Shown: positions 11,979 to 56,093 of the stretch, piece by piece
Position numbering within the stretch: the stretch's first letter is position 1
How the letters are laid out: each line of letters starts with the position of its first letter
Source: Phallusia mammillata
Lineage: Eukaryota
Direction: 5' to 3'
DNA length: 64,000 nucleotides
Assembly: GCA_965637545.1 (NCBI GenBank)
Contig: OZ281494.1
Span: 3,348,001-3,412,000 of the forward strand
The notes under the pieces: generated by a model
The model's database searches: none
What the model was told of the DNA's origin: nothing
Seen by the model: the letters and a program-made list of their open reading frames with translations, nothing else
Position numbers and translations under genes: made by a program

Positions 11979-12111
11979 TTTCAGCGACGACATTTTTTGA
12001 TTTCTTGTGAAAATCGAAGCGCGTTTTGCCATTGACTTCTTTTTTGAAGTTGTTCGGTTCGGGTTCAGGATAAATAGGCTTCTTCAGGCGTGACTTTACA
12101 CCTGGCCGCAT
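11979..12111 (-). CDS. Candidate first coding exon of SLCO-A
   Basis: ATG at 12111 opens the hydrophilic peptide MRPGVKSRLKKPIYPEPEPNNFKKEVNGKTRFDFHKKSKNVVAE, with a donor A|GTAACG at 11978 (phase 1). Reaching the phase-2 exon at 10492 would need a bridging exon. The candidate is 10700-10751 (CFRPRVCKCKKLSIFLR), whose GAG acceptor is weak. Confidence 0.35.
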
Positions 12112-32200: not shown

Positions 32201-35200
32201 AATGGTTGTTTAACATATTTATTATTTATCGTTCATAGATGACCAGTCAAAAAAAACACACACAAAATCTAACCACAATCTCTAAAGCTAAAAAGTTTGC
32301 AGCCCTCTGCCGCAATAATAACTGTTTTACTCCTGATATGAAATGACCAAAAGCTTCATTGATATGAAATTTAAATTCTACAATCATATTATAAATACTA
32401 AGTCCTCGGTATCGTAATGTGGACTGTTTGATAACCACTACTCTAATGTGTAAGGTTGTAAAGTTAAAATAATCATCCTGCTCATGTCAGAACTAAACAA
32501 CATGAGAACAGTTTGCAGGTTTCACATTAATACCTGGTTGAGAACACTGCAGAAAGAACATTCCTCCAGCGAGCAGTGAAAATACAACGAAGAACATACA
32601 AAATTTGATCATTCCCTGCACCTTCATGTTGGTTTTTGTGACGATCAAACCTCCAACAGAAAGTCCTATTGAACCTCCAGCCACTGCAACTAAACCTAGA
32701 ACGCAAATACAAATATGTGGACAATATTCACATACATGCAGAGATAAAAGATATAACCGGGTTTTATCACTCGTGTATTTGAATTGGGTTTAATTTAAGA
32801 AGGTAAGATCTGTGATTCTGTACGTATTTTTATGTTTGCTTTTTTTTATTCGGAAAAGCTAGCATTAGTAGTGGGCTACAAAAGACTAAAAGTATTTGGG
32901 TGGGCCTCAAGGGGCTTTCTAATTTGTTTTTTCAACAAAAATAGTTTTTCTGTTTTTTTCATGTGATAAATTTACACGTCACTATTATATAACAGAAAAA
33001 CAACTGTTTTACATAATGGTCTGGATTTTTTTGAACTGGTTTGTGCCCCAGACCCTTCCGATCACAAATCCTAACCCGGTTTTTTATTTCACCTAAGACC
33101 ATTCAGTCTTGTTCTAACCAAACAATAGTTTTTATGAGATCGGAACGAGTCGTCGAAAGTGTTCTAACCCCGTGAAAAAATCAAAATATAAGTTTGTTTT
33201 TGCACCAACCCGTGTAGAAAGCCCCCTCTGCGGCCGAAACTCCAAAAACAGTTTCCAAATATTTTGGAGCAAAACTGGAAAAACCACCGATCAGTCCAGC
33301 GTCCATGCAGTTTGCGAAAGTCATGAATAAATAGGGAGGGTTTCGAAGAAGAACCAGAAATTCTTTGTAGAAATTCACAGCCCTGAAAAATAGTTTTGAA
33401 ATAAAACAACATTTACGATTGTGGTTAATATATTTTATAATATAATGTTTTTCAGCTTTTTGTAGGTATTTGCTCAGCAATTTACCATAGACTTAAAGAA
33501 AGAAATACGAATGTAGTATAGATCAGCAAACATAAATAAAAATGTGTATTAGGTTAAACTGGTCACTTATTGTTAACCTGTGCCTACTTTATTGACATAA
33601 ACTATTAAATGATACACTAAATATACGTTAAACATATTTATAAGCTAAGAAAGAAAAAATGATTTTCCAAATAAAACAACAACCAGTTCATTCAAGAATT
33701 ATTTAGCAAAAGTTTGGCAAGGAACACCAAATTTATTATTTGAAGCTACTTTTAAAATACTGCCTCTGAGTACTGTACATGTGTCAAGTTTATCGAGGGG
33801 CGGGCACGCCCGTTGCTAGATCAAGCATGTGTTTAGGAAAAGACACTACAAGACATTTTATGGAGTACCCCTGGCGTTATGACGTTCATATCGATGAATA
33901 ATTTCAACACACGCGTATTAATAACTGAAAAATATTTTTTTTCGAAAGTTTGTGCGCTGAAAAGCTTTAAAGGCGTAGAATATTGTGTCAAAATTTCAGT
34001 ATCGTATCTTTTTTAGTTTTAGCGCAATTGCGATTGCTGACCAGCTTCTCTATGGGGTTGTTATGCCACGTTTTTAAGTTTAAGATTTTCTATTGGTGTT
34101 TCAAGGCACAGTTGAAACGCGAGCGTTGCTAGCAATGTCACACACAGCTTTATATAATATTTACCCACCTACTCATTTTCCCTTTGACATTTTTCACTTC
34201 TTTCTCATTTTCGTGCGACGTCACATATTTTTCGTTTTCGCGGTTTTTGCGGATTTCTTCCGTCCCGGGAAGATTTCGAGGCATCAGCAGCATGGGAACT
34301 AAGAATATACAAAATATTAAGTTTATTGTGTCCACTTGAAGTTTCATTCGTTCTTGTATTTTGGACAAATGTAGCGAATTTTTATTTGATTTTTTACCAA
34401 GCTCAGTTAAAACTTTAAATCTTTTTCGGATTTACGATGGAGATTAGGGGCATTTGCTGTACAATAAGAGTATTTTGTTTTTATAATTGTAAAATAATAT
34501 TAAAGGTAATTGATAACTTACTTAATGAAATTGTAAGTAAAAATGTTTGTAAAAATGCATGTACTGCATTTACGTCATGTGTCTTATTCAAATTTTGGCG
34601 CTGAAACAAATAAATAAAAAATTAATTGATTGACTGATTACTGCTAATATTTGCAGGTCCGCATAAATTTCAAGTTATCTACAACTGCTTTTTTGAAACA
34701 TTTAATAGCATTACTGGCCATGTAACAGCTGTCCCTGTACTACGGGTATTGGTATTGGTTCATGTAGGAGCTACATTAGGTTGTGCATGACATGACTCAA
34801 AGGTTTTCGTATTTTTATAATTTCTAGCAAAATTTCAAGCTCCCGCAATCTGGTAAAGAACTCACAGCTCAAAATAGTTTTTGTTTCTTTTTTACCTCGA
34901 ATTGTGACATTTAACGTCAGAAAATGCGTCCAGAATGCAAAATATCGACACTATGCCTAAAATTGGCGGTTTTAAAGCTTTACTTTGAAAGTGGATAAAC
35001 GGAAAAATTGGGGCAGGCGCGCCGGGCCATTAGGCCAGTAATCAATGTGGCTTGAATATGCAAGCAGTTTGTGTAAAATAACTGTCCAATATTTCTTAAA
35101 ATTTTTGTAATATTACCTGAAAAGAGGAATATCAATGTTCCACTTGCGATGTAGCCCGGCCACCAAGCACCGATCCATGATGCGTGTGCTGTTGTTATTG

Positions 35201-38200
35201 AAACTCTATTAAAAGTATGGCATATTAGCGTTGGTAGAACATATTATAACAAGATTTAATTACTTTGCCCACGATGGTGTCGTTTGTATAACTTACAACT
35301 TTATATGGCATTAGTGTCCTTTTTCATAAAAATATAACCTACACCTTTGTGTAAAACCTAAAATGTGCCATTTGTACACGCTTTCACCCAAACCGATTTT
35401 ATATGATAAACTGCAGACAGTACATACTCTCTCGATCTGGAACAGGGGTTCTTAAACTGGGGGGCTCGCCCCCCTAGGGGGGCGTGAAGGGTTCGCAAGG
35501 GAGGCGCAGCACATTATGGCAGCAAAGTTTTCACTTGCAAACAATTGTAAATGAATGCATTGGAATTAAGTCGGCACTGATTTCGAGCTTATTGTTTAAA
35601 GTAAACGCTTCATTACTCTGAAATGGATGTCCAGTTGTACTAACCAAACTTTTCTACACTGCGGGCCGGATACGTTTAATACTAATTCGCGCGGGCCGCA
35701 TAGTTTACATGCCTTAGTGCCGTCTTCTCAAGCTTAGCCCACGAGGCTATTTTTATAGGGGCGCCAAGATTATTATTTTTTTGTCGTTTTAAAAACCCAT
35801 TTAAAATCTGTCAAATTGTATAGTTAGTTTCATCTTACAAGGAATGTTTGTATATTACGTCACAAGTAACACAATAAGGCATTTGTTTGCGCACAATTAA
35901 CACTTTTTGTCTTCTCTGTGACGTAATAAACTGGCTTTGGATCAATCCTGGGCGTTGCAATCCTATGAAAGTCGGTAATATTAATTTTACAATTCGTAAC
36001 AGTAAACTTTCGTAAGGAGTAGATTAATTTTTATCAATAACAAAGTTATCAATACGTTTTGGCCTAAAAATGGGATCGCGGGCCATAGTTTGGTGACCCC
36101 TGTACTATATAGTCGGCGGCACATTCTTTATTTGTTCGCAATTTCGCCTTAGAGATTGCCTTGACTTTGAGTGAATCAACAATTTCTGGGCAACATGTGC
36201 GTAGTTTACAAGAATACTGGCAACGTGACTCTGTGTGCGCGCAAAAAAAAACTTTTTTTCGCAACTTATCAGTGTTGAAGTGGCTTTTTCTAACGATTGG
36301 AACTAACTCGACAGTAGCTTAAGGCGGACCTACGATGTATGTTGTTTTCAAAAACCAAGATAAGCATCATCAGTGCTAACGTTTTTTAGGGGGACGTGAG
36401 ATTAAATAAATAGCGTCAAGTGGGGGCACGACCGAAAAAGTTTAAGAACCCCTGATCTAGAAGGTCTCATCAGTACATCTGGTGACGGAAGATCTGTCTT
36501 ATTGGCTGCAACCAACGGCACTCCAGTTTGTTGTGAGTTACAGGCTTGAAAGCCATGTCATACCTATTCTGTTCGATGCCACAACTAGGCACACACCACA
36601 GATTAAACTGGCTCGCAGTGGCCAAGCAACTGCTTGAGAACCAAAGTCGGTTTGGTGTCACAGGATCAATGCTAAAGCATCGAGGCAATAGACGATTAGC
36701 TGCAGACAGTACTTGGAATTTATATTACTTCGTAACGAAATAGTTTTTAAATTTCTAGTTAAGTAGTGATAATTCATTGGAAAAAAACAGAGATGAAACG
36801 AACTGTCGGGTCTCGAAACTAAATCGTAAGCGTAGTCATGCGAGAGATATCCCGATGCAGTGCATGTTCACGACTCTGTTTCTCTAGTTACACGTTTGGC
36901 AAGTTTTGAAGCGTATCCCCAAGTTTCATGTCACGGTTGACCGAAATAATAATTTCGTTCACTGTTTCGCGCACGTTAAATTTACTGGTTAGGGGCAAAT
37001 TCACCTATGGTGAAGATCCTTAGGCGTAAGGAACAATCTTTTCCATTTGAGCACTTACTTTTCACCGATGTTAGTAAAGCATTGAAGCAGCGCACCAGAA
37101 ACCAAATATCCAACAGCTGGCCCGGTTGCTCCCGTGATAGCGAAGTAGATACCTGTTGTACATGCAAATCAAACTTTTCAGATACGTTTGCCCTTATTTG
37201 TTAGTATAACTTAAAGACAGAACTGTCAAAGCTTTCTAACTTTATGCTAAACAGAAGCGGTTGCTTAAATTAGTTCGTTAAATGCCCAGTACTTTCTGAA
37301 ATCAAACTTTTTACATATCTTTGCCCTCAAGTGATTAGACAGAACCGTCAAAAGCTTTTTAACTTTATGCTAAACAGAAGTGGTTGCTTCGGTCAAAATT
37401 AGTTACAGTAAAAAGTAAATAGTTTTCTTTCAATGTCCTGGACTTGTGCCGTAAAGAAATATTGCCGTAGTACAGTATAAAGTAATGAGTTTCCTAATAA
37501 ACTGCAAAACTATTCAAATCTACCATTTTATTATTATTTCCTAAAAACGTGCATGTCTTACCATGATAGAGGGATGAATATTTTTGAGCGACATTTTCAT
37601 CCAGGTAGGTCAATCCCAAAGTATAAAGTGCAGCAGCACCACAACCGTTCATGAGATTTCCAAAGTACAAAGCGTATCTAGAAAAAGCATGTTAGGTATA
37701 TGAATTCAACTGTTCGGTACGTTTAAATAACTTCTATGCTTCTGTTACTGCAGAAAATTACCTGATTTCAAAATAATAAAAAAAGAATAATTTGCGTTTT
37801 AACACCACCATACCAAAAAAGCGGTGATAAGTCTTGGAAATTTTGCATTATGCCTGACACTTAATATATCTCTGATGTTATTTCACTCATGTTCATACCA
37901 AAATAAAATGATAACTTTTGTAGTAAACATTAAAACTTTCCGCATAAATCAATACATACTAATGGAAAAGTACACTGACATTTCAATATATGTTTTGTAA
38001 CATGCCATATGGTATGTGGTATTTTCCTTGTGCCAAACACTAATACTGAAATAAAAACAAAAAAATCGCAAAAACATAAAATTTTGCGCAATACTAACGG
38101 TACACGGATTTGCAACATGCCATTTGTCACATGGTATTTTGCTCATGCCCAACAGTAATGCCAAAATACAAATATTTTGTAGGAAACATTCCACTTACAC

Positions 38201-39079
38201 ATAATTTCTCAAACTCGAATCAGTAGATCTCATTGTGGAGTTGACTGAACAAAGTAGTTCTCCGTTGCTGCTTGAATCCACTGTGTAACTTGGGGCGGCA
38301 AAATGGGGTAAAGAAAACACGATACATCCCGACCCCATAAGGATCATGCCCCACCCGATCCAGAGGGGTTTGTGCCCCCTTCCTCCCAAATACATCACAA
38401 TCGCTGTAGCGAATAGAGAAGCGATATCATAGGAGCTCATCACTAAACCGGATTCTGCACTCTTTAAACCGAATCTGCAATTCAAAACGGAGCTTTAGAT
38501 TTCCAGCTTATTTTTCTTGCATAAACCAAAATAAGTATTTCCTTTTTATCACCGCCTCATTTATTCATAAAATTAGAAATACCAACAAAGTGTTGGCGTA
38601 CCTATGAATTGTTATCGTTCCACTGGGACCAAATCAAACACTAATTAAAAGTATAAAAACAAATGAAATTGATGCCCAACTAAAAATACCCGGACTAATG
38701 TGGTTTTTGTTTGATTCAACAGTTTTACACAAGCGATTTTGCGAGGTTTGTTTCGTTAATTCTCGTTCAGTTTAGTTATATTACAATCAAATTAACAAAA
38801 CGCTAATGCAATGCACAACTACTATTCAAACATTTTTTTCTACATGTAAGACATGCAATTTGGCGATGGTGTTGATTTGTTATGTATTGTTTTGATTAAC
38901 ATTTGACTGAAATGATTCACACACACTAATAGCTGCGAACGTTTTACCGCTTCTCAATCGTTGTGAGGACAGAGTTCATCATCCCGTTGATTACAAATCC
39001 CTGGAAAAATCCAAGACACGACATAAAGAAGAGGGCCCAACGCGGGGTGGCAAAGCGTTGAAGAATCTTTAACGGTTGC
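29209..39079 (-). CDS. SLCO4-like: SLCO/OATP organic anion transporter, paralog C (OATP4-like); 13 exons resolved, first coding exon not found
   Basis: Exons: 38948-39079, 38199-38474, 37562-37677, 37059-37152, 35117-35205, 34169-34298, 33210-33382, 32534-32695, 31289-31482, 30692-30844, 30340-30393, 29723-29893, 29209-29313 (TGA). Total 1849 nt in frame. One GC-AG intron (30394-30691). Motifs: [76 protein letters not shown]. Confidence 0.93.
35443..36454. mobile_element. hAT-type non-autonomous element (1012 bp) containing a second hAT-type element
   Basis: TIRs caggggttcttaaact / agtttaagaacccctg with TSD atctggaa/atctagaa (one mismatch). An inner element at about 35632-36102 ends in gggccatagtttggtgacccctg and carries gcgggccg motifs. 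Confidence 0.88.
37217..37390. repeat. Short direct duplication of about 50 bp, two copies
   Basis: gacagaactgtcaaagctttctaactttatgctaaacagaagcggttgctt starts at 37217, and a near-identical copy starts at 37339. Confidence 0.8.
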
Positions 39080-39135
39080 CTGTTCATAAACAGAAAATTA
39101 GTTGGGAACACTATACACGGACTTGAAAAGTAATT

Positions 39136-39316
39136 TAATCATAAACATTACTGCCAAGGTACTGGTGTATATAGAATACATCATTCAGACGTTCCAACTT
39201 CCAGAAATCTCTGTTGTCATCATCAGTGCAGGTTGATGATGAAAACAGAGATTGTCGAAACGTCTGAACGATGTATTCTATATACACCAGTACCTTGGCA
39301 GTAATGTTTATGATTA
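39136..39316. mobile_element. 181-bp near-perfect palindrome with hammerhead-like cores (Penelope-like inverted ends)
   Basis: taatcataaacattactgccaaggtactggtgtatatagaatacatc is exactly complementary to gatgtattctatatacaccagtaccttggcagtaatgtttatgatta. The inner parts read (c/t)TGATGA-t-gacaa-cagaga-ttgtc-GAAAC-GTC as a consensus of the two strands. A related degenerate copy is at 431-463 (-). Confidence 0.8.
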
Positions 39317-42300
39317 GAAAGTTAGTTGTTTTGTGTTTTAATAGGGTTGTTTTTTGTCCAACCAAACTTATGTATTTCTTGAGTTTTATGACCATCTTAC
39401 TGCATTCATGTTCTCATGATGTTTTCAGGGGTCGGGTATCAGTTTTTAGTGTCTTTACATCAGTCTTACTCCACGACTTATTGGGATTTAACAACGTTCT
39501 TCTTGTCATCCCCATAATTAGAATATTACTGCAGATTTTAGTGGAAAATTTACATTCATTTTTTCTAGTACTTCCGTTTAAGGAAGTTTTGTGATGTGTA
39601 ACTTTACAAGGGCTGCTACATGGTCATAAGATACTATAAAGATACTATTAGATTACTATTTGGTTATAAGGTGCAGGGTGACTATACATGGTTATAAGGT
39701 AATGTGAATTTTTTTCTAGGTAAACCCTAGTTTGGTAAACAATACCTTTGTTTTAAGATTCACATAGATTTTTTTGAGTCGAACACTTTAAAACATTCAT
39801 GCTTGATGACTTTATCAGTTATATTCACTACCGTGATTTTCAGTAAAAGTAAATTGAGAAACTAACAGGCACATTAGCATATTCTGTGCAGTACAGTGTC
39901 ATGTACAGTTTTAAATTGTGTTGTGGTAATTAGACTGTAAAATGTCGTTATTTAACCATTTGGGTGGGAGGTGTCACAATATTTTTAAACTATAAAAAAG
40001 GCACCTTGCATTGAAAAAGCTCATAAAGATGCCCTAATTAGATAATTGACAAATACAAAATGAACAAACCGTTTCTTTCCTGTACAACATCCGTAATCAA
40101 GCTGCATACCACATAAAGTATCCTCGACATCCACTGGTTTTTGTTTTATTTCAACACTCATAATGTGGTTCTATTTACAATTGCTTTGGCTCAGAAGGTC
40201 TTAAGCAGTGAAAGAATGTTTTTGTTAATCCCACTCTGATTTCAGCTACAACAGTGATGTTTTTCTTTTGCCAAATGACGTACGTATATGTTTTGTAAAA
40301 GAAAACCTGCAACAACAAATACGTAAGAAATAAATTTGCACATTATGAATTTATGAATGATTTTAAACTTAAAAAAATAAAAACATATCTCGGAAAACAA
40401 TTAAGCTTTGTTTATAATTTAGAGACCTTACGACGTTCAAAGAACAAACAACGTAAATCATTTCCAACCTAACACCGTTTAGAGAACATCACTGCCATTT
40501 AAGAATTTCAAAGCGAAATTCTAAATTTTATCTTGAGATTCTTTCTTACCGTAACACTGACTAAATCAGAAAAAAACAGTTTCCACTCAAACTAATCTCA
40601 CCACGTTGGAAATTACGGCCCGTACAAGATGAATAACATATATCCTTGCAAACAGCTCAGCTATATTCCTAGTTTTTAGTTACAGCTTGCTATGTTCAGA
40701 GCATAATAAACCTATCGTCTCGCAGACATACAAAATGTTTCGTATTGACCCGAAAACAAGTAGGCTACAAAAAACTTCCAGTGCGAAACACCAAGACAAC
40801 CTAACGTGGCTATAGAAACCGGTGACGAAACCAATGACATGCATCCGTTGGCGTCAAAACAAACTCTCTGCATTAAAACAGGCTGTGTTTTGGAAAGATT
40901 TCGTGACACAAAGCACGCAATAAGCAAAGGCAGATTCCTCTAAAACTACGCAATACAGAAACAACGTAACACTTTGCGTTTTTCCACTTAAGTCGTTTTT
41001 GTTGTTGACAAATAAGTTAAAGCAAAAGTCGCCTATAAGAAATTAGGACAAGGGACAATTTTGCATGAACTTATGTATGCAGTTGATAGGTGAATGAAAA
41101 CTCTTTTAAAACACTGTACGGTAATATACTGTTGTCAAGGCACCTCAAATAATGTTATATTTCTAATAACTCTATTCCTCTGCTAGTAATAAACGCAACT
41201 AACCTTTCATAGTACTATTTTAGGTATCTAAGCTTCTCTAAGGACGGTAGCTGACTGTTCTGTCTTTTTACCTGCAGCCTATTTTGCGAGATACAATAAG
41301 TCAGCACACCAATAATCTCATCTTTAACTTAGAGACTACAACTTTATCACTTTCACAGCTACGCCCTCTTGCTAAATAAGGAAGGTATAGGCAGATTGTA
41401 TGCGTTAGGGCTAACATTTTAAAGAAGTGACCTATGTTGGCAAAGTTACAGGCGTCGGATTTGCACAACCATTTTTGTCACGAGCTCTTTACAGAGAAAT
41501 GTCGATCGTGAGGCTTCAACTTTAAATGCCCCAGAGTACTGGTGCGTTTGAAGCATGATTACTATTACAACACAAGTTACGAAGTAATTAACGTGTTGAT
41601 TTCTATTGCAAGTGGAAACTTCTTAAAACACACAGAAGTGCTTCAAACTCAAATAAGCCGCTTGAACAACTAGATCTGTGAGGTTTTTTCAGAGCAGTTA
41701 GCGGCAAGACATTGGCAAGCGTAGCCACATTACATCAATTTAGTTTGTTGGGAGTGACAGGCTGAAAAGCCCCGCATCACCTTATCTGTTCGATGCTGCA
41801 CAATTTTTGACACGTGCTGTCTCCAAGTTTACAAATTTACTTTCACGTTTAGGATTATGAGAAAACTAAAAAAAATCCATTTGAATCTCAATTTGTTTGA
41901 ACTTTCAAAACACTATAAGTAACTTTCCATAACGACGTCAGAGAAATGAGCCACTTCACGAAAAACTTCACTTCCCATGAAGCGGCCTTAAACTGTGACG
42001 TAGCATAGTTTTAAAATTCACTATTTTGAGCTGACGTCACTGTTGACATTAGCGACATTATTACATCTTGAATTTAAATTCCCATCTTGCAGGAAATGAC
42101 GTCATGCTTTGGCGGAGTTGACGCGAGACAACGAATTACCACGCAGATGTGTTTTACAGCACTTAGTTTGTTTACTTATCCGATGTAAACAAAAAACAAA
42201 CGTTTTCACGCATGTCATGCAGAGACATTTTATAGGTTGCTAAAATATAAATAGATGCGACGTAATGAACAAATACGTCATTTTTCGTTGTAATCGTTTA

Positions 42301-42931: not shown

Positions 42932-43180
42932 AAATAAGTACATCAGGACGACAGAGAAATCTATTAAAGACACAGGGGGCAGTAGAGAATACAATAGAGA
43001 ACTTATTTTTGCCGCCCAGCCACAGAATTAGTTACGATATTCGCTTTTCTATTGAACGAAATACGTTTTAAAACAGTTTTTATCTGTACTGTAATTTCTA
43101 TGAATATTGAACAATTATTATTATAAACTTATTATAAACACTGTTTTCCGAACGTTCACGTTTTGATGTGTGGCGTAAGA

Positions 43181-45466: not shown

Positions 45467-48400
45467 ATGCTTCAAAATCGTCGCTCATTGCGTATGAGCA
45501 TATCTGAAGCAAAAGTAAAGATATCTTGTCCAGTCGAAGATACAACTTGTGGCTTGCAACTAAACTACGGATGCTGCCCGAAGAAGAAACGGTGAGAAGC
45601 TTTAATTTAAGTTTAGGTGTGTTACTTTACCAAAAGTACATAGAATGATGACCGTAGATTGCAGAAAATCTGATTTCTTTGCGACTTCAGACATGCGGAA
45701 CTCTAATTTAGTGGTTTTTCAAGCGATTTGCCACGAGGATGTCGTGATAGATTGATAAATATATGTGTTCGCAGGATCCAAACGTCTGTTTAAGGTCCTT
45801 ATGACATAATTCGAAAATAACCTATCTTAAGTTTTAGAAATTAATGAAAAAATGTTGGTGTACCTAATTGCACCAAGACCATCTTTTCAATTGATTTGTC
45901 ACAAATAGTGATAATTATCAAAGCTTTAAACAAAGTTGATTTGAACGATTTAATGTTGTATTTTTTATTTTATTTTTTTGTCATGCTAAGTTACCGCCTT
46001 CCGTGTCGCAAGCATAAAAAGGTTGGGAAACGCTTGCTTCACTCATCAAACCACTGAGACTATGTATTTGCTAATATCGACTAGGCATTTTTACTACAGA
46101 CAGCAACTTTATCTAAGCTGTTTAGCTTTCTAGTGATGCTTAAGTGCTTTAAATGTATAAACCTGGGCAGGTATTTTCCATGCTATTAGCATTTCACAAC
46201 AAAACCACTGCATCTTGTAATTTGGACTTAAATTGGGCTAAATGCCGGTTGGAAGATAGTTGGATTTACTAAGGGACTGACATAGTTTTAACTTTGGTTT
46301 TATTTGCAGACAACCAATTGGTTTTCTGCAGGGATTCGCGTCATCTCGGTGGGTTTTATGCTTCTTCTGTTGTCTCGGTTTCGCGTACGGGTTGGTCTCA
46401 AATGGAATGATGAAATCGGTTCTAACCACTGTTGAAAAAAGGTGAGTGAGTGAGTGAGTGAGTGAGTGAGTGAGTGAGTGAGTGAGTGAGTGCTCGTGTG
46501 AATACGTTGCAAAAGTAAGTTATTATTAGGCCTTATTTTTCAGATTCGGTTTAAAAAGCGCGGAATCTGGTCTAATCATCAGCATGAAAGAAGTCACAGC
46601 AATTGCTGGAGCAGGAATAGCAATGTTTGTTGGCAGAAAGGGTCACAAACCACTGTGGGTTGGCTGGGGTACGGTGATTATGGGTTGGGGTACCATTTTG
46701 TTTGCAGTCCCCCATTATGCTGCACCCCGTTACACAGTAAATACCGATGTGGGGTCGCAGTTTCTATGTCTTGCCAATACAACACACGTAGCAGCCCAAA
46801 GTACAGAAAAATACCTGTAAGTACAAAGCATGTGATACTCAATATTCAAAAAAATATTTAAATGCCTAAATTGACGGTTAATTTGTAAATGCTGAACACA
46901 CATAGGAAAAGCAACTAAGTTTCTATAATGCACTAATAATACTAATGGAGATTGTCAAAAAATCTGCACAATATGTTTTGTTTATACCCATGTTCCATAT
47001 TATTATTTTTTATCAAGTTACTTTTACTAAATCAATGGTTAAATTGGCCATTTGAAATTACATTGCGTTACCTATGGAATCAAACATGATTTGATTATTA
47101 CCAGTTTAAATGCAGGTACATTTTCTACATTTCTTCGCTGATGATAGGATACGGGTCAACGGCAATTTACACTTTAGGACTAACCTTCATCGACGAAAAT
47201 GTACCTCAAAAATCCTCTTCAACGTATCACGGTGAATTTACGTGTTATTTACATAATTATTATTTGAATCGTATTAAACTTAGATGTACAACGAGACGAA
47301 ATCATAGGTTTGGGATCATGAAGCATTAAAATGCAAAATAGCGAAAATCACGACACAAATGTACAAGCTCTTGTAATAGTTGAAAATTGTTGCAACTTTA
47401 TCAAACATTTTCCGCCAAAATTCTACCAGCCTGGTTCTAACATTCACTTTAAAAAAACACGAAAACACTAGGTTTACATTTTGCGGACGACGCAAACAAA
47501 ACGATTTCAGTATTTTTGGTCTATAAGTTTTCTTTGCCAATTTTTTTACTTTTATTTTTGCAGCTATATTTTTTGCGATCTCCAATGCCCTTGGCCCCGC
47601 AATTGGTTACCTTGGAGTAGGAGCTTTGCTAAAAATCTACACCAACATTGGAGAACAGTAAGTTTTGTCGCATAAGCCTTTTATCTCAGTAGGGATGAAG
47701 CAGATTTAAATTTAGCCGCAAAAAGCGATTAATGTCCCGTAAGGTCGATGTGTTAGGCATTTGTTATTGTTGCTGCTGCAGTAGTTGCTTCTGTTATTGT
47801 AGCTGTTGGCACATTGCTACTTTTAAAAGTTTCCGTAATTGGTGGTTAAGAGCTACTTCTGTACAGACGTTTGCAAGGCCACTGAAACAATCCCATTTCC
47901 TGTTTTTCAAGAAACTTTAACGAAGACCAACCACAGAAGCGATCACTAAAAAAATTCTTCTTTGTAGAGTTACGTTTGACGACACTCACGTTGAATGGGT
48001 TGGAGCTTGGTGGCCGGGATTTCTTGCTGCTGGAGTTTGGATGCTCGTCTTTTCAAGTAATTTTAACTAACTGATGCAGCGTTCCTACCTGCATGACGCA
48101 GTACACTGAAACAGGGGGTCCGAAAAGAGTAGGAATAAAAAATTTACAAACCCTTAATCTAAATAAAAATGAGTGTAGAATCGTTATGATTTGTAAAAAC
48201 CAAATGTCTTGTTCATTTTTGAAAAGAGTTAAAACCTAGACTTGTTTTGCATGGCATCAGTAAGTTATCTATGGTGGAGATGTGCGCTTCACAGCTCCAG
48301 TTTCATGACGTTTAACAGTTGTGCGCATGCGCAAGTATGAATACGCGTGCGCACTTGGAAAACCAACATGCCGGGAGAAATATGTCACAAGGAGCTTTAT

Positions 48401-51400
48401 AAACAAGAGTTAAAAACCTCATTTATACTAAATATTTTATGGCCTATAAAACCTTCGACCTTAACTTCGATTTGCGACAAAAAAATTCAACTTTTGAACA
48501 CTCCGGGTGGAATATTTTCGCATAGCAGCAAATTTCTTCAATTCTGGCCTAGTTGTTGTACGATAAAAAACTGTCAGGTAAGGCAACTAGAAAAACTCAT
48601 CAAAGTTGATGTTTATATCACGATTGTGTGTAATTGTTCTGCCTCTAAATACAAGGGTTATAGACCAGTGGTTCTCAAACTCGGTTTTCGGGGCCGCATG
48701 CGGCTCCCAACTACTTATTTTGCGGCTCGCACCAGACCTCAGAAAACCACCAAACATTGCTATTTTAGCTTTCAAAGTCATCTTCTTTAGTGATTTTCTC
48801 AAGGTTTCGTTTGTTTTGCGGCTCCCTACACACTTAAAAAATACCATTTGGCCCCGACAATAAAAAAGTTTGAGAACCACTGTTATAGACCCATTGAGAA
48901 AATAGTACAGTAAATGATTATTACATTTTACCTATTTTTCTAACTCGGTTTTGGTGAAACAGTGTGTGTTAAGATGGTTCGACCGTGTTACTCCCAAAAC
49001 TGAACAACACATTGAAATTGATAAGTTATTGTTCATCGTTAACAGTTCCAGTGCTGATGCTTCCGCGCAATTTGCCGGGAACTGAGGAAACAAGGGAAAA
49101 TCGAGGAACTGAAAGTTACGGAGCTTCCACAGATCCGACAACAGTAGCTGAAGAAGCGGAGAAGGAAAATAACACCAATAGGTTTGGATCAGTTTAATAC
49201 AACCGTTTTCAAGCAGTGAAACATAGAATAGTTTTCAAATAGGCAAAACATAAAAGGCCTTTTCCTGGTCTGTGGCGTGTCGTAAGGCAGCGTTAAAATT
49301 GACCAAAGATCCAAACTTAAACGTTGTTATAACTGCGGCAAAACAGTTACTGCATCAATACAATACTATACAAGTATGTGCCACAGCAAGACTATGGGCA
49401 ATGTTAATGAGACAATGGGCCGGAATTAAAAATATTGGAATAATAAGTATTTATTTTTTGGACTCGCTCAAAATTAACAAATTTACTAAAAAAAATTATA
49501 GGTGAAATCGTATTCAGACCCTATTACATACCTATCTTGCTTGCACAAAGTAAAATCCATTTTGTTACAAAAACCTTTGTTAACGTTTTAAAGGTTCAAG
49601 AAAGCATGGGACGATTTTTTTGTTCTTCTCCGCAATCCGCCCTATCTTCTCATGTGCTTTGCCAACAGTATGGAGGCTGGTACGATAGCCGGTTTGTCAA
49701 CATTTATACCGAAATACCTCGAGGCAATGTACGGCTTATCGGCCACGGAGGGCGCTCTATACACGGGTAAGATTTCCGACACGTTTGCAGGTTTAAAGCA
49801 GGAACTTGACTAAATGGTCTGGCGCGCCTGATTCATATACAAACATAAAAAATTCAAGCAGGATTCGTCCTCGGGAGCGTCCAGGGTATAAAACTTGCAA
49901 AAAATGTGTGTAAATTTCTGTAAATGGATTTTACACGCACTATAAGCAAACTCACTGAGATTGCTACCTGCCCTAAGACATCAAGATAAAGGGGACATTA
50001 CAAGTACTAACCCCTATTTTTTAATATACGGCAACTTATGATTGTCATTCTCTAAATGTAAATGTTGCAACAACGTTTTTTAGCTTTCAAGCTCGATTAA
50101 CTCAAAGGTGCTCGGAGCCGCCACAAGGGCCTGCTCTAAGCTAATATTGTAACACATCCTTTCTCTGTTCGGTATAGACCTGCAATTGTCAGCTGTTGCA
50201 ATCTTTGTTGACTATATAAAAACGGCATATAAAAACAAGACAGGAATATAACGTCTGTCTTGCACAAGCACCAAAAACGCCTACCACGTGCCTTTCCTGC
50301 CACGTCGAGTATCGCCACGTACAGAACAAACACTGGGCTCGCAACAGAACACATGTGACGTAATAATTATGTAACAATATTAGGTCACTTTGATACTGAA
50401 CGTGAAGCCTTAACTCATCTTCAACTTCTTCTCAGGTATTGTTGCGATTGGAGGAGCTTTGATTGGATTATTATCAGGAGGAGTGATTGTGAGCAAAGCT
50501 GAACTGAATGTGGAAGGAATCATGAAGTTCTGTTTGTCGTTTTTGGTTTTTTCGGTGCTTTGTTCCGGGGCTTTCTTTCTCACCTGTCCTGAACTAGGTA
50601 AGTACAAGATCGCAGTCAAAAATACAAAGATTCTTTAGCTCGAATAATTTTGCGAAATTAACAAATTAGTTCGAATAATTTGCGTTGTTTTGGGGGTAAT
50701 GCGGGACCTTTATTGGTGTACGTATCTACATCCCGGCGAGAACCCGATTTAAAAAGCCAAAATTATTCCCGAAATATATAATTAACAACGGTTGCGACAC
50801 TAATGTGTCTGATCATAATGTCAGGTCGTAGAAAATAAACTTAAGGTTCTCATGGAAAAGTTGGAATAACTAATATGAGCTGTAATAAATTTTTATTGCT
50901 GAACATTTGTTGTTTTAAGGCCGGTCCGTGATACAATTTTAGTTTCAAACTGGTCCGCAGGGCTAAAAAGGCTGCCGACCCCTGTTGCAGCGTATCGTTC
51001 ATTCAAGCACGTTTTCATGTTTTGCTTGTTCACAGTTTTGCAGTGTTCTTGTTCTAGTGTTCTAGTTGAGGAATTATTAAGTAATACTGTTGCAACTTTA
51101 ACATTCCACGACAAAAAAAATGTTATGAAGTGAACACTTTTTTAGGACGTTCAAACAATCCCTTGTTTCAACGATTGTCAAATCAATTTAAACTATAATT
51201 ACGTTTCATACAGGAAATCCAAGACGTTAGCGTTACAATGTACTCTCTTTCTACAATCTCTGGGACTGTTTTTCACTTGATAAAGCCATTTTTAAGTATG
51301 TGTTTATAGCGTTCCTTAACCCTTTAACTGCGGCGGGCGCATAAATGCGCCCCGACACATGCCTGGTTCGAAACAGCGATAAAAATCGTATTAGTGCGGA

Positions 51401-54400
51401 TATATTTTTTTTTTACAACTGGGGTGCGTTTGAAAGCTTATGCATATTAGCTTCAATTTATTCGAAAAAAATGATATGTTAGTATTTGAAAAAAATTAAT
51501 TACACTAAGTAGAAAGTCAAAATTCAGAAAAAAACAAGTTTTTTCCTAATTTTTGTTTTACAGCCATTTTTTATTATTTTACGCTTGGTTGATTCACAGA
51601 CAGCTGTTTGGAGTTGATTTCAGGGCTTTGCGCGCATGCTGCGGCTATCTTTGTTTACAATTTGATATGTGTTCAGCTGAATTGGGCTTGGAAGTGGGTA
51701 GTTGGGGGCAGTGAATTTGCCTTGATTTGCTTGAATATACTGCTGTATCAGTCAGTTTAGCTTTACTATTCGTGGTGACAGCAGTTATTTATCAAGAAAA
51801 CAACTGTTGTGGAAGCATTTTTTTGACTTAGAAAGTTTGTGGTTGCTGACCAATATTTTGATTATATCTGGCCCTCAACTGCATTTACATTGTCAAATGG
51901 TGGGAGGATTTGGCCTCATAAATGGACAACAAATACAGAAGAATCAGTGCAAAGTACCTTGGGAATGCTTGGAATTGTGTTTTTTCTGCTAACTTCTGTG
52001 AACTGTGTTTCAAACTTACACATGTTGTGGTGTAATGATACATAATAAACATCCCATGTACAAACACTTGTAAATGAATTATGTGTGTACAGATATTTAG
52101 TAAACGTTTATAAGTCCGTAAATTGTCAAGATTGCCAAAAATTATGATTGAAAACAAGTTTCATACGCTCAAAAACATTAATTTTATCCATTACTACAGA
52201 AAAATAAGAAACTAAAATTGATCATTATGACGTCATGAGCTAATTAATGACGTCATCGAAAAAAAACACATCAAGTTTTGTAAGGAATTATTTGTAAAAC
52301 AACTTGGAACTAATAATTGTAACGAAAAACACCGCTAAACTGCAATTTTATGGAAAAATAGAATTGAAATGACGTCATTTTGTAAGTGATGACGTCATCG
52401 AAAAATTTTTCATCTTTGAATTGTAGAAAATTTTATACCCAACAACTTTCCCAGAGAAAGTTTTTGCCTATCTTCTATCGATTTTGCATAAAACCCTAAA
52501 GAGCAAGAGCAGGTCTAAACATTAATTTTTGTCAAAAAGAATTCAGCAGTTAAAGGGTTAATGAACTAAATGGTGCTCTTCTAGCACACATATTGGTTTG
52601 CAGAAAAGGCGACCTGAAAGGGACGTTAAAACATAGGCAAAACAATACAACTTACTTGCTAAAAGGACATCATTTAGTTCATTTTATGCCTAGCAGGAAC
52701 AGTTTATTAGCAATCGTAATGTTTACTTGCATGACAGGTTTCGCTGGAGCCACTGTCCCTTATCACAATGAAACATCAGCCTTAATATCAGCCACCAACT
52801 TCTCCTCTTCTTGCAATCTTCACTGCGGATGCAACAGTGACGTATATAATCCTATCTGCGGAGATAATGACGTCACGTATTTCTCTCCCTGTTTCGCAGG
52901 CTGCACCGAGACTATCAACAAAGTAAGAGAAATTTGACATTTTTTTGTAATCTTGACAAAACTGCTTTCCTAGCATGGTTCTGCCGTTTCGAAATGACAT
53001 AAGTAACGTAGAAGCGACCTAATGCTTTACTAAAATGCATTGCTTAGTCTGTTTCTTATCACAATTTTTGTTACAGTTTAGACCAGTTTGATTCAAATTT
53101 ATTAATACATCGTCAAATGATCCTTGTGAATTCAAGAAAAATATATTTCGCCCCTGCGGCATCTTTGCGTTCATTGTAGTCTTGATCCACCAAGCAACAA
53201 GCTGGGAGATTTTAGCTTAAAGTCTTTGGTTTTTCCCGTGATTTTTTCCAAAGAAAAATGAGAAAAATAAATTTTCTTTCTTTCGCATTTTCTTTTGTCA
53301 AGATTGGCTTTTTGCGTTTTCTGGTAATACATATATTTGTAAAATATGTAAATTTTAATTTCAGACTTACTTAAACTGTTCTTGTGTCAGTCTGCTGAAC
53401 CAAACTCACACGTCAGCAAAGCTGGGAATTTGTTTGGCCAAGAATTGTACGAGTCCAGCAGTGTTTCTTGTACTACTTTTTTTGCTCACCGTATCAACTT
53501 TCATTTGTTGGACCCCTAATATACAGGTAAAAGTGAATCCATGCGATTTTTCTTAGTTTTTGTACTTTGAGTCTTCACTTGTATCCAATAAGACAAATAG
53601 TGGTTCTTAACCTTTTGGTAGTTTTCGGGGAAAAAAACGTTTTCGTCTTGATGAAGTCTTGAAAAACTATTGTAAAAACAAAGTCTAGATAAGTTCCCTA
53701 TCCCTATTACAATGACTTTTTTTATTTTATTTTTATTGGGCAACCCCTGACAAATACGGCACATGAAGTGGTTCAGAAAGTCGGATTCAAGTCATTTTTA
53801 AAATATATTTCAATAGTCTTAAATACCTCAGCCTGCATGTAGGAATCTGTCTGCATTCTGTCTGCTGTTGAAATCAAATCACAAGAAGCCATACGACTCA
53901 TAATAAAACGTTTTTGAAGACATGGAATGTTTACACGTTTAACTCAACTCACACAATACAACTCAAAATATGTTTTTTTAAGAATACGAAAGCTTACATG
54001 TTTATAAACTTTTGTTTGCAGATAGTTCTTCGAATAGTTCCTTTTACTCATCGAGATTTCGCGGTTGGCACGCAGGTTAGTTTTGCAATGATGTTTAGCA
54101 ACATTATCAGTTCTTGCTTTGCCTGAAGTTTTGTTATAAATAACTGGCGCATCATATTCGAGGCGCATCATCCTGCTCTTGATCAATTTCAAAACACCGT
54201 CATGGTCATATAGCACAAGAAAGTAAAATATCGTAAAACAAGAACGTTCATTCAGCACGCCTTGTAGCAAATGTTTAATTAGTTTTTGTGGCGTTTGATC
54301 ATGATATTGAATTAGATAACCGTTTTGACTCAATACCGCATTTTATTATTTTATTACAAGTGAAAATGGTTCTTTAAACTGTAATCAGTTTAACAGTATT

Positions 54401-56093
54401 ATTGAACTCGCAAAAAAGATCGGGAAAAAGTTCCTCCAACATTAGAAAACGTTTTTAACGTTATTTCAACTTGGAAAGATAAGTCAGATGCCACAAATAA
54501 TTACGATTTAAAGGAACACCCGGTAAAAATGTACGTAGCCTTCAATTCAATTCTTGTTTAGACCGTGTTTTAAATGAAATCAAATGTTTAATGATAAAGA
54601 TAACGGCCCAAATATATTCTTTATTAGCATCTCGTTTTTTACGTCTATTTGGGCCCTTATCTTTATCATTAAATTATAAACAGATCCGTATAGTGTCCGA
54701 AAATTAAATGTATCTTCCGTTTTTTGTAACGCTGACAAACGAAGTAAATAAAGGTGTAAAATCATAGAAAATATGGCTCGGCATTCTATGTTGCATTTGG
54801 GACAATACTACAAAATAGTGGTTAGAGTTTTAAGTGATATTTTGTGTTCCTTGCTTTTCAGTCGATAATCAACGACGTTTTAGGATCGTTTGCTGCTCCA
54901 ATTATCATGGGTCGCATATTAGACTTGGCCTGTGCGGTTTGGAACACCGAGGACGGCGTAGTTTCCTCGTGCAGGAGATATTTTAACCACCAGATGTCGT
55001 TGTACATATTTGGATTTGTCATTGCACTGAAGGTATGTAATTTAGGGCAGGAACTTGGCCGAACGGTCTAGCGCGCCTGACCCATATACAGACACAAAAA
55101 AAACTGATCGGGATTCGTCCCCGGGAGAGTCCTGGGTTCGAACCCCGTGAAAAAAAAAAAAAAAAAAAAAAAAGGTATGTAATGTAGTGCAGGAACTTGG
55201 CCGAATGGTCTAGAGCGCCTGACCGATATACAGACATAAAAAACCTTAATCGGGATTCGTCCCCGGGAGTGTCCTGGGTTCGAACCCCGTGAAAAAAAAG
55301 GTATGTAAGTTAGGGCAGGACTTTGGCCGAATGGTCTAGAGCGCCTGACCGATATACAGACATAAAAAACCTGATCGGGATTCGTCCCGGGGAGTGTCCT
55401 GGGTACGAACCCCGTTAAAAATAACAACAAAAATAAAAGGTATGTAATTTTGGGCAGGAAAATTACCCGAAAGATCCAGTCCAGGGCGCTTGACATTTAC
55501 ACAGACATAAAATTGATCAGGATTCATTATTGAAAGCTTCTAAGTTCCGAACCCTATCAAAAAACATCTTGGGCGCTAAACCTTAGGATCACAAACATTT
55601 TTCAACCTGCTGCAGCGTTAATTTTACTTGCTCTCGTCAGTGGTGTGAGCTTAACCTAAGTGAAAAGTCTGGCAGCTGGACGCGTACGACCAGATATCTA
55701 CAGATCCTTTTTTTCTGGACCAAAAAGTTTTTCATGTCCATTTTGGAAACAAAATATCCATCAAAGAGTATTCAACGCACAAAATAAACGAACAATTTAT
55801 TACATATTTGTCGCATTCATTTAAAACCTTGACAATATGTGACCTTATGAGGCTGATGGTTATGCATCACTATTAATGTGTAAACATCATAACGTTTTAA
55901 AATAAGAACGTATTATCGAGCTATTGTTAAATTCGTTTTCATATCCAATTCTCGCTTTAATATCAAAATATTTTTTCAGTCCCTAGCAATAATTTCCTAC
56001 ACCATTGGTTTCCTCATCTACAAACAAAGCAAGACAAAGGATAAAGCGGTTGATGATGTTGGGAACACTGAAGACAGCGCGTTCGAAAATTAG
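45467..56093 (+). CDS. SLCO4-like: SLCO/OATP transporter, paralog D (divergent, inverted relative to A-C); complete, 14 exons, 661 aa (652 aa from the second ATG at 45494)
   Basis: Exons: 45467-45591, 46310-46441, 46544-46816, 47116-47231, 47564-47657, 47968-48056, 49046-49181, 49594-49766, 50436-50597, 52738-52922, 53365-53526, 54022-54075, 54862-55032, 55980-56093 (TAG). All introns are GT-AG, the frame is uninterrupted, and exon sizes 132/116/94/89/173/162/54/171 match the paralogs. Confidence 0.93.
46442..46492 (+). repeat. (GTGA)12 microsatellite starting at a splice donor
   Basis: Twelve perfect GTGA units plus GTG begin at the first intron base after SLCO-D exon 2. Confidence 0.97.
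48666..48882. mobile_element. hAT-type MITE (217 bp)
   Basis: TIRs cagtggttctcaaact / agtttgagaaccactg with a perfect 8-bp TSD ttatagac. Confidence 0.93.
49797..49890 (+). mobile_element. Degenerate copy of SINE family 1
   Basis: gcaggaacttgactaaatggtctggcgcgcctgattcatatacaaacataaaaaattcaagcaggattcgtcctcgggagcgtccaggg aligns by eye to the 55048 copy. Confidence 0.75.
51320..52557. mobile_element. piggyBac-type non-autonomous element (1238 bp)
   Basis: TTAA on both sides and TIRs ccctttaactgc / gcagttaaaggg. A Cys-rich coding relic near 51930-52025 (QCKVPWECLELC; FCELCFKLTH in another frame) is reminiscent of the piggyBac C-terminal Cys-rich domain. Confidence 0.88.
54589..54705. mobile_element. 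Internally deleted relative of the 23908 inverted-repeat element
   Basis: taatgataaagataacggcccaaata ... tttttacgtctatttgggcccttatctttatcatta is followed by aacagatccgtata, as at about 24197. Confidence 0.7.
55030..55530 (+). mobile_element. Head-to-tail array of SINE family 1 (three full copies plus one degenerate), each preceded by a copy of the splice-donor sequence
   Basis: Each unit is aaggtatgtaa...gcagga-A box-spacer-B box-ccccgtg-poly(A). GT of the repeated motif lies at 55033 (true donor), 55175, 55301 and 55440. The first copy has a 24-A tail (55150-55173). Confidence 0.9.

What the first reader, a model, noticed from the sequence alone, without database searches (positions are those of the whole stretch)
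54862..54897. Charge reversal of the conserved TM11 arginine (R to D) in SLCO-D
Seen in sequence: A, B and C read QWMLNRAIG, QWVFNRCIG and QWILNRALG, whereas D reads QSIINDVLG at the same exon position (codon GAC). Established knowledge: this Arg corresponds to the conserved pore-facing R580 of human OATP1B1, which is important for anion transport. D also changes the TM1 Gln (LQG/FQG to AYG) and TM2 (SSYN/SCYD/SSYD to SMKE), yet keeps PKY and an intact frame. Inference: D may have switched to neutral, zwitterionic or cationic substrates, which would be unusual for an OATP.
Basis: partly seen in the sequence, partly recalled or inferred. Interest (0 to 1): 0.72.

Follow-up and report, generated by a model that had tools for sequence, protein, structure and literature searches.

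The report
Sea-squirt OATP with rewired central charges
One of four neighbouring organic-anion-transporter genes in the sea squirt Phallusia mammillata has replaced the family's near-invariant pore arginine with aspartate and gained two new lysines nearby, and it is expressed and conserved, so it is a natural experiment on how these transporters use their buried charges.

Summary
The window (Phallusia mammillata) holds four OATP4A1-like genes, each with 14 coding exons. Paralog D (45494-56093, + strand, 652 codons, no stops, canonical splice sites) has GAC (Asp563) at 54874-54876. HMMER aligns this position to Arg580 of human OATP1B1. A, B and C have Arg there, as do the three other OATP genes of this genome and 113 of 119 homologs; none has Asp or Glu.

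D is a working gene. Spliced contigs from three runs (two studies) join exons 7-13 exactly as modelled, with no mismatch on exon 12. The C-D split is old (synonymous sites saturated, omega about 0.14).

In solved OATPs this Arg is mainly the TM11 half of a buried salt bridge with the TM2 acid (E74), not a ligand contact. D changed that whole network: N68K (TM1), Y92K and D93E (TM2), Q59Y, N178I and R563D. The formal charge count stays zero. D-lineage substitutions concentrate in TM1/2/3/11 (26 versus 1 in C).

My best reading is a polarity-inverted, charge-balanced network with an altered pocket. A simple anion-to-cation flip is less likely. No transport data exist and D was not folded.

The parts
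45494..56093 (+). SLCO-D coding region. It has 14 exons: 45494-45591, 46310-46441, 46544-46816, 47116-47231, 47564-47657, 47968-48056, 49046-49181, 49594-49766, 50436-50597, 52738-52922, 53365-53526, 54022-54075, 54862-55032 and 55980-56093. It encodes 652 codons plus TAG.
   Evidence: The model was built by homology to paralog A, using the same intron phases and GT..AG sites. Junctions 7/8 through 12/13 are confirmed by spliced contigs. Exon-wise Pfam OATP and Kazal matches support it.
54862..55032 (+). Exon 12 of D. It encodes TM11, extracellular loop 6 and the start of TM12.
   Evidence: It matches Pfam OATP profile positions 497-545 and OATP1B1 residues 579-627. Contigs of X1, X2, X3 (RNA) and X7 (DNA) cover it with 0 other letters.
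54874..54876 (+). Codon GAC, Asp563, in the R580 (OATP1B1) / R561 (SLCO2A1) column.
54892..54894 (+). Codon GCT, Ala569, in a column that holds Pro in 114 of 119 homologs (TM11).
46587..46592 (+). Codons AAA GAA, Lys92-Glu93 in TM2. They lie in the F73-E74 columns of OATP1B1. The family has Tyr (116/119) followed by Asp (109/119).
46413..46415 (+). Codon AAA, Lys68 in TM1. It lies in the K53 column of SLCO2A1 (by alignment) and the K49 column of OATP1B1 (by ungapped numbering). The family has Asn in 98 of 119 and never Lys.
46386..46388 (+). Codon TAC, Tyr59 in TM1. The column holds Gln in 113 of 119 homologs and lies next to the K41 column of OATP1B1.
47144..47146 (+). Codon ATA, Ile178 in TM4. 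The family has His in 102 of 119 and A-C have Asn. I place this at the R181 position of OATP1B1 from my recollection of that sequence, not from a tool alignment.
29209..40161 (-). SLCO-C, the sister paralog of D, arranged head-to-head with it. It has 14 exons and 646 codons. Its Arg codon CGG is at 29881-29879.
18493..26816 (-). SLCO-B, exons 1-13 (the first coding exon was not found). Its Arg codon CGT is at 19158-19156. B matches P0004 (Phallusia mammillata) at 99.8%.
2452..12706 (-). SLCO-A, with 14 exons. Its translation is identical to P0002 (UniRef, Phallusia mammillata, 642 aa). Its Arg codon CGG is at 3124-3122.

Best explanation
SLCO-D is a real, transcribed and selectively maintained OATP4A1-like transporter gene. 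Its buried central charge network has been rebuilt as a set. In canonical OATPs an Arg on TM11 (R580 in OATP1B1) pairs with an acid on TM2 (E74). This pair ties the two halves of the protein together near the middle of the membrane. In D the TM11 Arg is Asp563. The residue before the TM2 acid has changed from Tyr to Lys92, the acid is lengthened from Asp to Glu93, and TM1 gains Lys68 in the column that holds K53 in SLCO2A1. The polar Gln59 and Asn178 are replaced by Tyr and Ile. I infer that Asp563 now pairs with one of the new N-lobe lysines. That would be an inter-lobe salt bridge of inverted polarity, with Glu93 paired to the other lysine. The pivot and overall neutrality would be kept (two plus, two minus, against one plus, one minus in C). 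The positive potential that the Arg contributed on the C-lobe side would be lost. The pocket's electrostatic pattern, and therefore probably its substrate preference, would differ from A-C. A simple anion-to-cation reversal does not follow. Shown here: the residues, their columns, their uniqueness, expression, constraint, and the concentration of changes in TM1/2/3/11. Inferred: the new pairings and any change in function.
For: The column identity is established: D5 of the exon aligns to R580 of 8phw_A, A's Arg aligns to R561 of SLCO2A1, and TM2 K15-E16 align to positions 73-74 of OATP1B3 and F88-E89 of OATP1C1. The residues are unique: Asp at the Arg column, Lys at the Tyr column and Lys at the Asn column each occur in 0 of 119 homologs. 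All six other OATP genes of this genome keep Arg. The gene is expressed and the codon is real: a 2497-nt contig in X1, plus contigs in X2 and X3 (two studies), carry GT..AG joints at 50597/52738, 52922/53365, 53526/54022, 54075/54862 and 55032/55980. None of these joints occurs in DNA run X7, exon 12 has 0 mismatches, and the loose end at 50435 equals the end of exon 7. The gene is constrained: C-D pS is 0.72 (saturated), pN is 0.26 and omega is about 0.14, with 652 codons free of stops. The remodelling is directed: changes polarised with A, B and Clavelina as outgroups number 75 in D and 57 in C overall, but 26 versus 1 in TM1/2/3/11 (Fisher 7e-7). An omnibus permutation test gives p=0.001 over 13 segments and p=0.013 by exon. 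The only charge-changing D-lineage substitutions inside TM helices are N68K, Y92K and R563D, and C has none. The family data are consistent with a need for charge balance: four of the five homologs with a non-basic residue at this column (tick proteins, T or I) have also lost the TM2 acid (H or Y), against 6 of 114 that keep a basic residue there (113 Arg, 1 Lys). The literature describes R580-E74 as a highly conserved charge pair and proposed central pivot, with no ligand contact to K41/K49/R580 (PMC10709409). MD keeps E74-R580 in both conformations (PMC12955633). K53 and R561 together form the charged patch at the bottom of the SLCO2A1 pocket (PMC12398505).
Against: There is no three-dimensional model of D. 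The spliced protein has no reference, so it was not folded, and the Lys-Asp pairings rest on helix positions taken from other OATPs. Lys92 is at i-1 of the acid, about 100 degrees around the helix, so it may not reach Asp563. R561Q and R561C in SLCO2A1, and R580A in OATP1B1, severely reduce transport. D could therefore be a poor transporter despite the compensating changes. Formal charge counting ignores protonation of buried carboxylates. No ortholog from another species was available to show that the combination is conserved. The tick correlation may reflect only one or two evolutionary events. Reads were laid only on exons 8-13, so the Lys68 and Lys92 codons are confirmed by the assembly alone.
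Confidence: 0.5

Rival explanations
1. The Asp faces the translocation pathway and changes charge selectivity, so D carries cationic, zwitterionic or neutral substrates instead of the usual amphipathic anions. The mechanism would be the same as the Arg/Asp dichotomy on TM11 that separates anion and cation carriers in SLC22.
For: The Arg column is acidic only in D. The Arg is thought to supply positive potential that favours anion binding, and R561Q abolishes uptake (PMC12398505). In SLC22, R466 of OAT1 and R454 of rOAT3 (TM11) are linked to anion recognition and D475 of OCT1 to cation recognition (PMC9521027). From my own knowledge, not checked here, the rOAT3 R454D/K370A double mutant prefers a cation. 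A pocket with two acids and two bases would suit zwitterions. This reading is compatible with the rewiring described as the best explanation.
Against: Two new lysines enter the same network, so the formal charge is unchanged. In the solved OATP1B1 and SLCO2A1 complexes the Arg is 8-11 Å from the ligand and does not contact it (PMC10709409, PMC12398505). No transport data exist. The neighbouring GCLC-like gene lies on the opposite strand, convergent with D, so adjacency gives no support for a gamma-glutamyl substrate.
Confidence: 0.25
2. D has lost, or nearly lost, transport activity and is kept for another role. Candidates are a binding or sensing protein that uses its conserved extracellular Kazal-type domain, or a partner that modulates C.
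For: Mutating this Arg cripples human OATPs (PMC10709409, PMC12398505). D's changes hit the most conserved membrane positions (Q59, Y92, R563, P569). Meanwhile the extracellular loops stay very close to C, with pN 0.04 in exon 9 and near-identity in ECL6.
Against: The changes are confined to one face (TM1/2/3/11) and are charge-balanced. TM4-6, 9 and 12 evolve no faster than in C. The total number of deviations at family-conserved columns is ordinary: D 26, A 21, B 27, C 22. The gate motif E75-K76-R77-F78 and the WVGAWWPGFL signature are kept.
Confidence: 0.12
3. Glu93 and Asp563 form a buried carboxyl pair that binds a proton or a metal cation. This would turn D into an ion-coupled or strongly pH-gated carrier.
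For: Two acids sit where OATPs normally have one acid and one Arg. From my own knowledge, not tested here, buried carboxylates are the usual proton-coupling sites of MFS symporters.
Against: Two lysines were gained in the same network, which argues for ion pairs rather than a free carboxyl pair. There is no structural or functional evidence.
Confidence: 0.08
4. The Asp is an assembly or sequencing error, or D is a decaying pseudogene.
For: No protein for C or D is present in the two large protein collections.
Against: The codon differs from C at all three bases. The DNA contig of X7 and spliced contigs of X1-X3 match exon 12 exactly. All 14 exons are open with canonical splice sites, although synonymous divergence from C is saturated. 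The genome holds no second copy of the exon, so a retrocopy does not explain the spliced contigs.
Confidence: 0.02

Closest known systems
Vertebrate SLCO4A1 (OATP4A1) and its invertebrate '4A1-like' relatives
   Same: D shares the Pfam OATP domain with an inserted Kazal-type domain, the 12 hydrophobic segments and the WVGAWWxGFL motif. It falls in a tunicate clade that groups with vertebrate 4A1.
   Different: D has Asp instead of the TM11 Arg, Lys-Glu instead of Tyr-Asp in TM2, Lys instead of Asn in TM1, and Tyr instead of Gln in TM1. None of these residues occurs in the 119 homologs compared.
Human OATP1B1/1B3 and SLCO2A1, with solved structures showing the R580-E74 (R561) charge pair
   Same: The fold family is the same. 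D's Asp563, Glu93 and Lys68 occupy the R580, E74 and K49/K53 columns.
   Different: The polarity on TM11 is inverted, and an extra Lys sits at the F73 column. OATP1-specific pairs (K41-E185, K49-D70) are absent from the whole OATP4-like group.
Tick OATP4A1-like proteins lacking the Arg (P0126 Ornithodoros, P0136 Ixodes, P0140 Haemaphysalis, P0131)
   Same: They are natural OATPs that have given up the TM11 Arg.
   Different: They replace it with a neutral Thr or Ile and also drop the TM2 acid (His or Tyr), so the pair is deleted. D keeps the acid, makes TM11 acidic and adds lysines, so the pair is inverted or re-partnered.
SLC22 organic anion versus organic cation transporters (OAT1 R466, rOAT3 R454, OCT1 D475 on TM11)
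   Same: This is another MFS drug-carrier family in which Arg or Asp on TM11 goes with anion or cation recognition (PMC9521027).
   Different: It is a different family and this is an analogy only. The TM11 positions are not shown to be homologous, and D's selectivity is unknown.

Membership tests
OATP/SLCO (Pfam PF03137) | Match to the OATP profile along the whole protein | tested here: met
   D's exons match profile positions 1-30, 30-106, 132-173, 172-200, 202-232, 226-270, 283-339, 332-397, 429-483 and 497-545 of 545, in order.
OATP/SLCO (Pfam PF03137) | Kazal-type cysteine-rich domain in the large extracellular loop between TM9 and TM10 | tested here: met
   Exon 9 matches Kazal_2 at E=8e-8 and Kazal_1 at E=5e-4.
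OATP/SLCO (Pfam PF03137) | Twelve-helix MFS architecture comparable to solved OATPs | tested here: inconclusive
   Paralog A aligns end to end with SLCO2A1, OATP1B1/1B3 and OATP1C1 chains, and D's exons 2 and 12 align to them too. D has 12 hydrophobic segments, which I assigned by eye. D itself was not folded.
OATP/SLCO (Pfam PF03137) | Family signature around the TM6 border, W-x-G-A-W-W-x-G-(F/L)-L (recalled from the literature) | tested here: met
   D reads WVGAWWPGFL.
OATP/SLCO (Pfam PF03137) | Conserved Arg on TM11 (R580 of OATP1B1), called strictly or fully conserved in PMC12398505 and PMC12955633 | tested here: not met
   D has Asp563, codon GAC at 54874-54876. This is a conserved functional residue, not a criterion for family assignment.
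OATP/SLCO (Pfam PF03137) | Acid on TM2 that pairs with the TM11 Arg (E74 of OATP1B1) | tested here: met
   Glu93 is in that column. Its usual partner is missing.
OATP/SLCO (Pfam PF03137) | TM1 extracellular-gate motif, E56-R57 of OATP1B1 (ExRF) | tested here: met
   D reads E75-K76-R77-F78. Family columns are E 117/119, R/K 118/119 and R 117/119.
OATP4 subfamily (SLCO4A1-like) | Groups with SLCO4A1 rather than 4C1 or other subfamilies in a tree, with best database hits named 4A1 | tested here: met
   The tunicate clade holding A-D groups with vertebrate 4A1, while 4C1-like proteins fall outside. Hits are named 4A1 or 4A1-like. Only a quick tree with SH-aLRT support was built.
Processed or unprocessed pseudogene | Stops, frameshifts, lost splice sites, no transcript, or neutral substitution pattern | tested here: not met
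   D has an open 652-codon frame and canonical GT..AG sites, spliced contigs and omega of about 0.14.

The most novel reading that the evidence does not exclude
SLCO-D could be the first OATP whose charge selectivity has been turned away from anions, making it a carrier of organic cations or zwitterions, possibly ion- or proton-coupled. It would have arisen by inverting the TM11/TM2 charge pair. This would parallel, inside the SLCO family, the OAT/OCT split of SLC22.
Probability: 0.2. Interest if true: 0.8.

Novelty: new variant of a known kind. Interest (0 to 1): 0.55.

Why it matters
The TM11 Arg and its TM2 acid are the most conserved charged pair in OATPs, and mutating the Arg is pathogenic in SLCO2A1. 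Whether the pair acts as a structural pivot, an electrostatic lure for anions, or both is still argued from mutants that mostly just lose function. D is an evolved, expressed protein in which the pair was inverted together with compensating changes. It offers a working template for reciprocal swap experiments with its sister gene C. Those experiments would separate the structural role from the selectivity role. They could also show whether the OATP scaffold can carry non-anionic substrates.

Tried and rejected
- **Exhaustive representative search with D's TM11 exon.** It returned only 25 hits. The top one (P0001) is a spurious bacterial repeat protein. No C- or D-like protein is in the collection, so it gave no orthologs. 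It did yield P0002, which is paralog A.
- **Word search with P0002.** It found A, B (partial) and one other Phallusia OATP, but not C or D. D therefore has no database protein id, and it could not be sent to the fold, cluster or contig look-up tools.
- **PDB search with D's exon 1.** It found no hit. The TM1 correspondence to OATP1B1 K41/K49 rests on ungapped numbering from the exon 2 alignment and on the A-SLCO2A1 alignment.
- **The first automatic last-exon predictions for C and D.** These were wrong (E>0.5). They were replaced by exons found by motif and an acceptor site. D's last exon was then confirmed by the RNA joint 55032/55980.
- **dN/dS beyond the C-D pair.** Synonymous sites are saturated for every other pair, so no branch test was attempted.
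- **Literature searches.** The search for the rOAT3 R454D/K370A work and for ascidian OATPs gave nothing usable.
- **tRNA scan of the SINE-like repeats in intron 12.** It found none.
- **Operon-like or co-oriented link to the GCLC-like neighbour.** Rejected, because that gene is on the minus strand and convergent with D.
Full report
**What is in the window.**
Three are on the minus strand (A at 3136, B at 19170, C at 29893) and one is on the plus strand (D at 54862).
- A database protein, P0002 (UniRef, Phallusia mammillata, 642 aa), maps onto the window exon by exon. A 14-exon model of A translates to exactly that protein.
- Using A's intron positions and phases I built models for the other three genes. 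B covers exons 1-13 and is 99.8% identical to the partial P0004. C has 14 exons and 646 codons. D has 14 exons at 45494-56093 and 652 codons.
- Every D exon is open and bounded by AG/GT. Exon-wise Pfam scans cover the OATP profile from position 1 to 545 in order, with a Kazal domain in exon 9.
- The spliced models were joined only inside local scripts, for alignment, trees and substitution counts.

**The observation.**
- D's exon 12 begins S-I-I-N-D, with GAC at 54874-54876. A, B and C have W-x-x-N-R with CGG, CGT and CGG. C and D differ at all three bases of this codon.
- phmmer against PDB sequences aligns N4-D5 of the exon with I579-R580 of 8phw_A, which is native-length human OATP1B1. A's Arg aligns with R561 of SLCO2A1.
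- In a MAFFT alignment of 119 OATP4-like proteins from across animals the column is R 113, T 3, L 1, I 1 and K 1. There is no acidic residue.
- The whole Phallusia assembly contains seven OATP TM11 exons. The six others all encode Arg.

**Is D a living gene?**
- Logan contigs of three runs from two studies were laid on 50400-56300. They show GT..AG joints at exactly the predicted boundaries of exons 8/9, 9/10, 10/11, 11/12 and 12/13.
- None of these joints is present in the DNA run X7. The sequence hanging off the start of exon 8 is the end of exon 7.
- One contig is 2497 nt long, enough for the whole coding sequence. Exon 12 is covered with zero differences in the RNA-type runs and in the DNA run.
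- The genome has no second copy of the exon, so the spliced contigs are transcripts and not a retrocopy.
- D's closest relative is C, at 58.5% identity and SH-aLRT support of 100. Between C and D, synonymous sites are saturated (pS 0.72) while pN is 0.26, giving omega of about 0.14 or less.
- An unconstrained copy would not have kept 652 open codons and 26 splice sites over that distance. The refutations 'assembly error' and 'not expressed' therefore both fail.

**What the Arg does in known OATPs.**
- Shan et al. (PMC10709409) describe three charge pairs in the OATP1B1 cavity: K41-E185, K49-D70 and the 'highly conserved R580-E74'. They see no contact between ligands and these basic residues, and they propose R580-E74 as a central pivot of the rocker switch.
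- Barber et al. (PMC12955633) find in MD that E74-R580 persists in both conformations like a pin between the lobes. They call R580 fully conserved in human OATPs.
- For SLCO2A1 (PMC12398505) the 'strictly conserved Arg' R561 lies 8.3 Å from PGE2. Together with K53 it forms the charged patch at the pocket bottom. R561Q and the pathogenic R561C abolish uptake.
- The Arg therefore matters, but mainly as half of a buried inter-lobe ion pair and as a source of positive potential.

**D changed the whole network, not one residue.**
- The exon 2 alignments to OATP1C1 and OATP1B3 put D's Lys92-Glu93 in the F73-E74 columns. The family has Tyr (116/119) then Asp (109/119), and never Lys or Glu.
- Lys68 in TM1 falls in the K53 (SLCO2A1) column by alignment, and in the K49 (OATP1B1) column by ungapped numbering from exon 2. 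The family has Asn in 98 of 119 and never Lys.
- Gln59 (113/119) has become Tyr, Pro569 (114/119) has become Ala, and Asn178 has become Ile. The family has His at the Asn178 column. I equate that column with R181 of OATP1B1 from memory of its sequence, not from a tool alignment.
- Counting formal charges in the network, C has one acid and one base, and D has two acids (Glu93, Asp563) and two bases (Lys68, Lys92). Both sum to zero.

**The changes are directed.**
- I polarised C/D differences using A, B and the Clavelina ortholog P0025 as outgroups. Overall D has 75 lineage-specific changes and C has 57, which is not significant.
- In TM1, TM2, TM3 and TM11 the counts are 26 against 1 (Fisher 7e-7). 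In loops they are 28 against 37.
- Without choosing segments after the fact, a permutation test over 12 TMs plus loops gives p=0.001. The same test over the 14 exons, which is an objective partition, gives p=0.013. The excess lies in exons 1, 2 and 12.
- The TM boundaries were set by eye from hydrophobic stretches, which is a weakness. The exon test does not depend on them.
- D is not degenerate overall. At 136 family-conserved columns it deviates 26 times, against 21, 27 and 22 for A, B and C.
- Inside helices, the only charge-changing D-lineage substitutions are N68K, Y92K and R563D. C has none.

**Evidence from other natural variants.**
- Five of the 119 homologs have a non-basic residue at the Arg column. 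Four of them, tick proteins with Thr or Ile, have also lost the TM2 acid (His or Tyr). Only 6 of the 114 that keep a basic residue there (113 Arg, 1 Lys) lack the acid.
- These may be only one or two events, so this is a hint and not a test. It agrees with the idea that a buried unpaired charge is not tolerated. Ticks deleted the pair. D appears to have inverted and re-partnered it.

**Interpretation.**
- The most economical reading is that Asp563 now pairs with a lysine from the N-lobe (Lys92 and/or Lys68), and Glu93 pairs with the other. This keeps an inter-lobe tie and neutrality, but moves the positive charges to TM1/TM2 and puts a carboxylate on TM11.
- That should change the pocket's electrostatic pattern and probably its substrates.
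It has an analogy in SLC22, where Arg or Asp on TM11 goes with anion or cation recognition (PMC9521027). It does not follow from the sequence once the two lysines are counted.
- Alternatives are a crippled transporter kept for its well-conserved extracellular parts, or a proton- or cation-binding carboxyl pair.
- The idea of a gamma-glutamyl substrate rests only on adjacency. The GCLC-like gene noted earlier (s1-399096) lies on the opposite strand, tail to tail with D.

**Limits.**
- There is no fold of D, no ortholog from another species and no transport data.
- Reads were laid only on exons 8-13.
- The run labels are coded and marked 'RNA?' by guess, although the splice joints settle their nature.
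- The tree was a quick one.

**Verdict.**
- D is a new variant of a known family, with a clear experimental programme.

Noticed in passing
window 52738-52922 (D exon 9) and 31482-31289 (C exon 9): The Kazal-domain exon is far more alike between C and D than any other exon. Its pS is 0.295 and pN 0.04, against pS 0.57-1.0 elsewhere. This suggests a later gene conversion between the head-to-head paralogs, or unusually strong constraint that extends to silent sites.
   Followed up: partly
window 55040-55530 (D intron 12); also 21421-21588 and 49797-49910: Three tandem copies of a roughly 140-nt SINE-like element follow exon 12, one with a poly-A run. In DNA run X7 their word depth is about 130,000-440,000 against about 240 for unique sequence, so this is a very abundant repeat family. 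It also appears in the RNA-type runs. ARAGORN finds no tRNA in it.
   Followed up: partly
window 51188-52566 (D intron 8): Another high-copy repeat, with depth 6,700-75,000 in the DNA run. It has several variant letters and short RNA-run contigs.
   Followed up: no
window 57250-63000, minus strand: The GCLC-like gene reported earlier (s1-399096) reads on the minus strand (GCLC-like peptides at 58847-59137 and 62780-63001). It is therefore convergent with SLCO-D. Only about 0.7 kb separates the 3' ends.
   Followed up: partly
P0126, P0131, P0136, P0140 (tick OATP4A1-like proteins): These natural OATPs have Thr or Ile instead of the TM11 Arg and His or Tyr instead of the TM2 acid. This looks like a coordinated loss of the conserved charge pair in a tick lineage.
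   Followed up: partly
window 9859-9581 (A exon 2); P0025 (Clavelina): Paralog A and its Clavelina relative have Asn instead of the TM2 acid (SSYN) while keeping the TM11 Arg. Their Arg would lack its usual partner.
   Followed up: no
window 26817-29000, minus strand: No first coding exon (the CG[LM]Q...CC motif) was found for paralog B between B exon 1 and the end of C. B may start differently or its first exon may be diverged.
   Followed up: no
window 40162-45493: C and D are head to head, with 5.3 kb between their start codons. A shared bidirectional regulatory region is possible. Inverted-repeat-like ORF echoes occur at 42673-42934 and 39100-39590.
   Followed up: no
P0001 (2310 aa, bacterial-type repeat protein): This was the top hit of the exhaustive search with the 57-aa exon. 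It is spurious: a six-fold repeated SDALGSFAKPVVIG motif resembles NDVLGSFAAPIIMG. It shows that short-exon queries can be led by low-information matches.
   Followed up: yes
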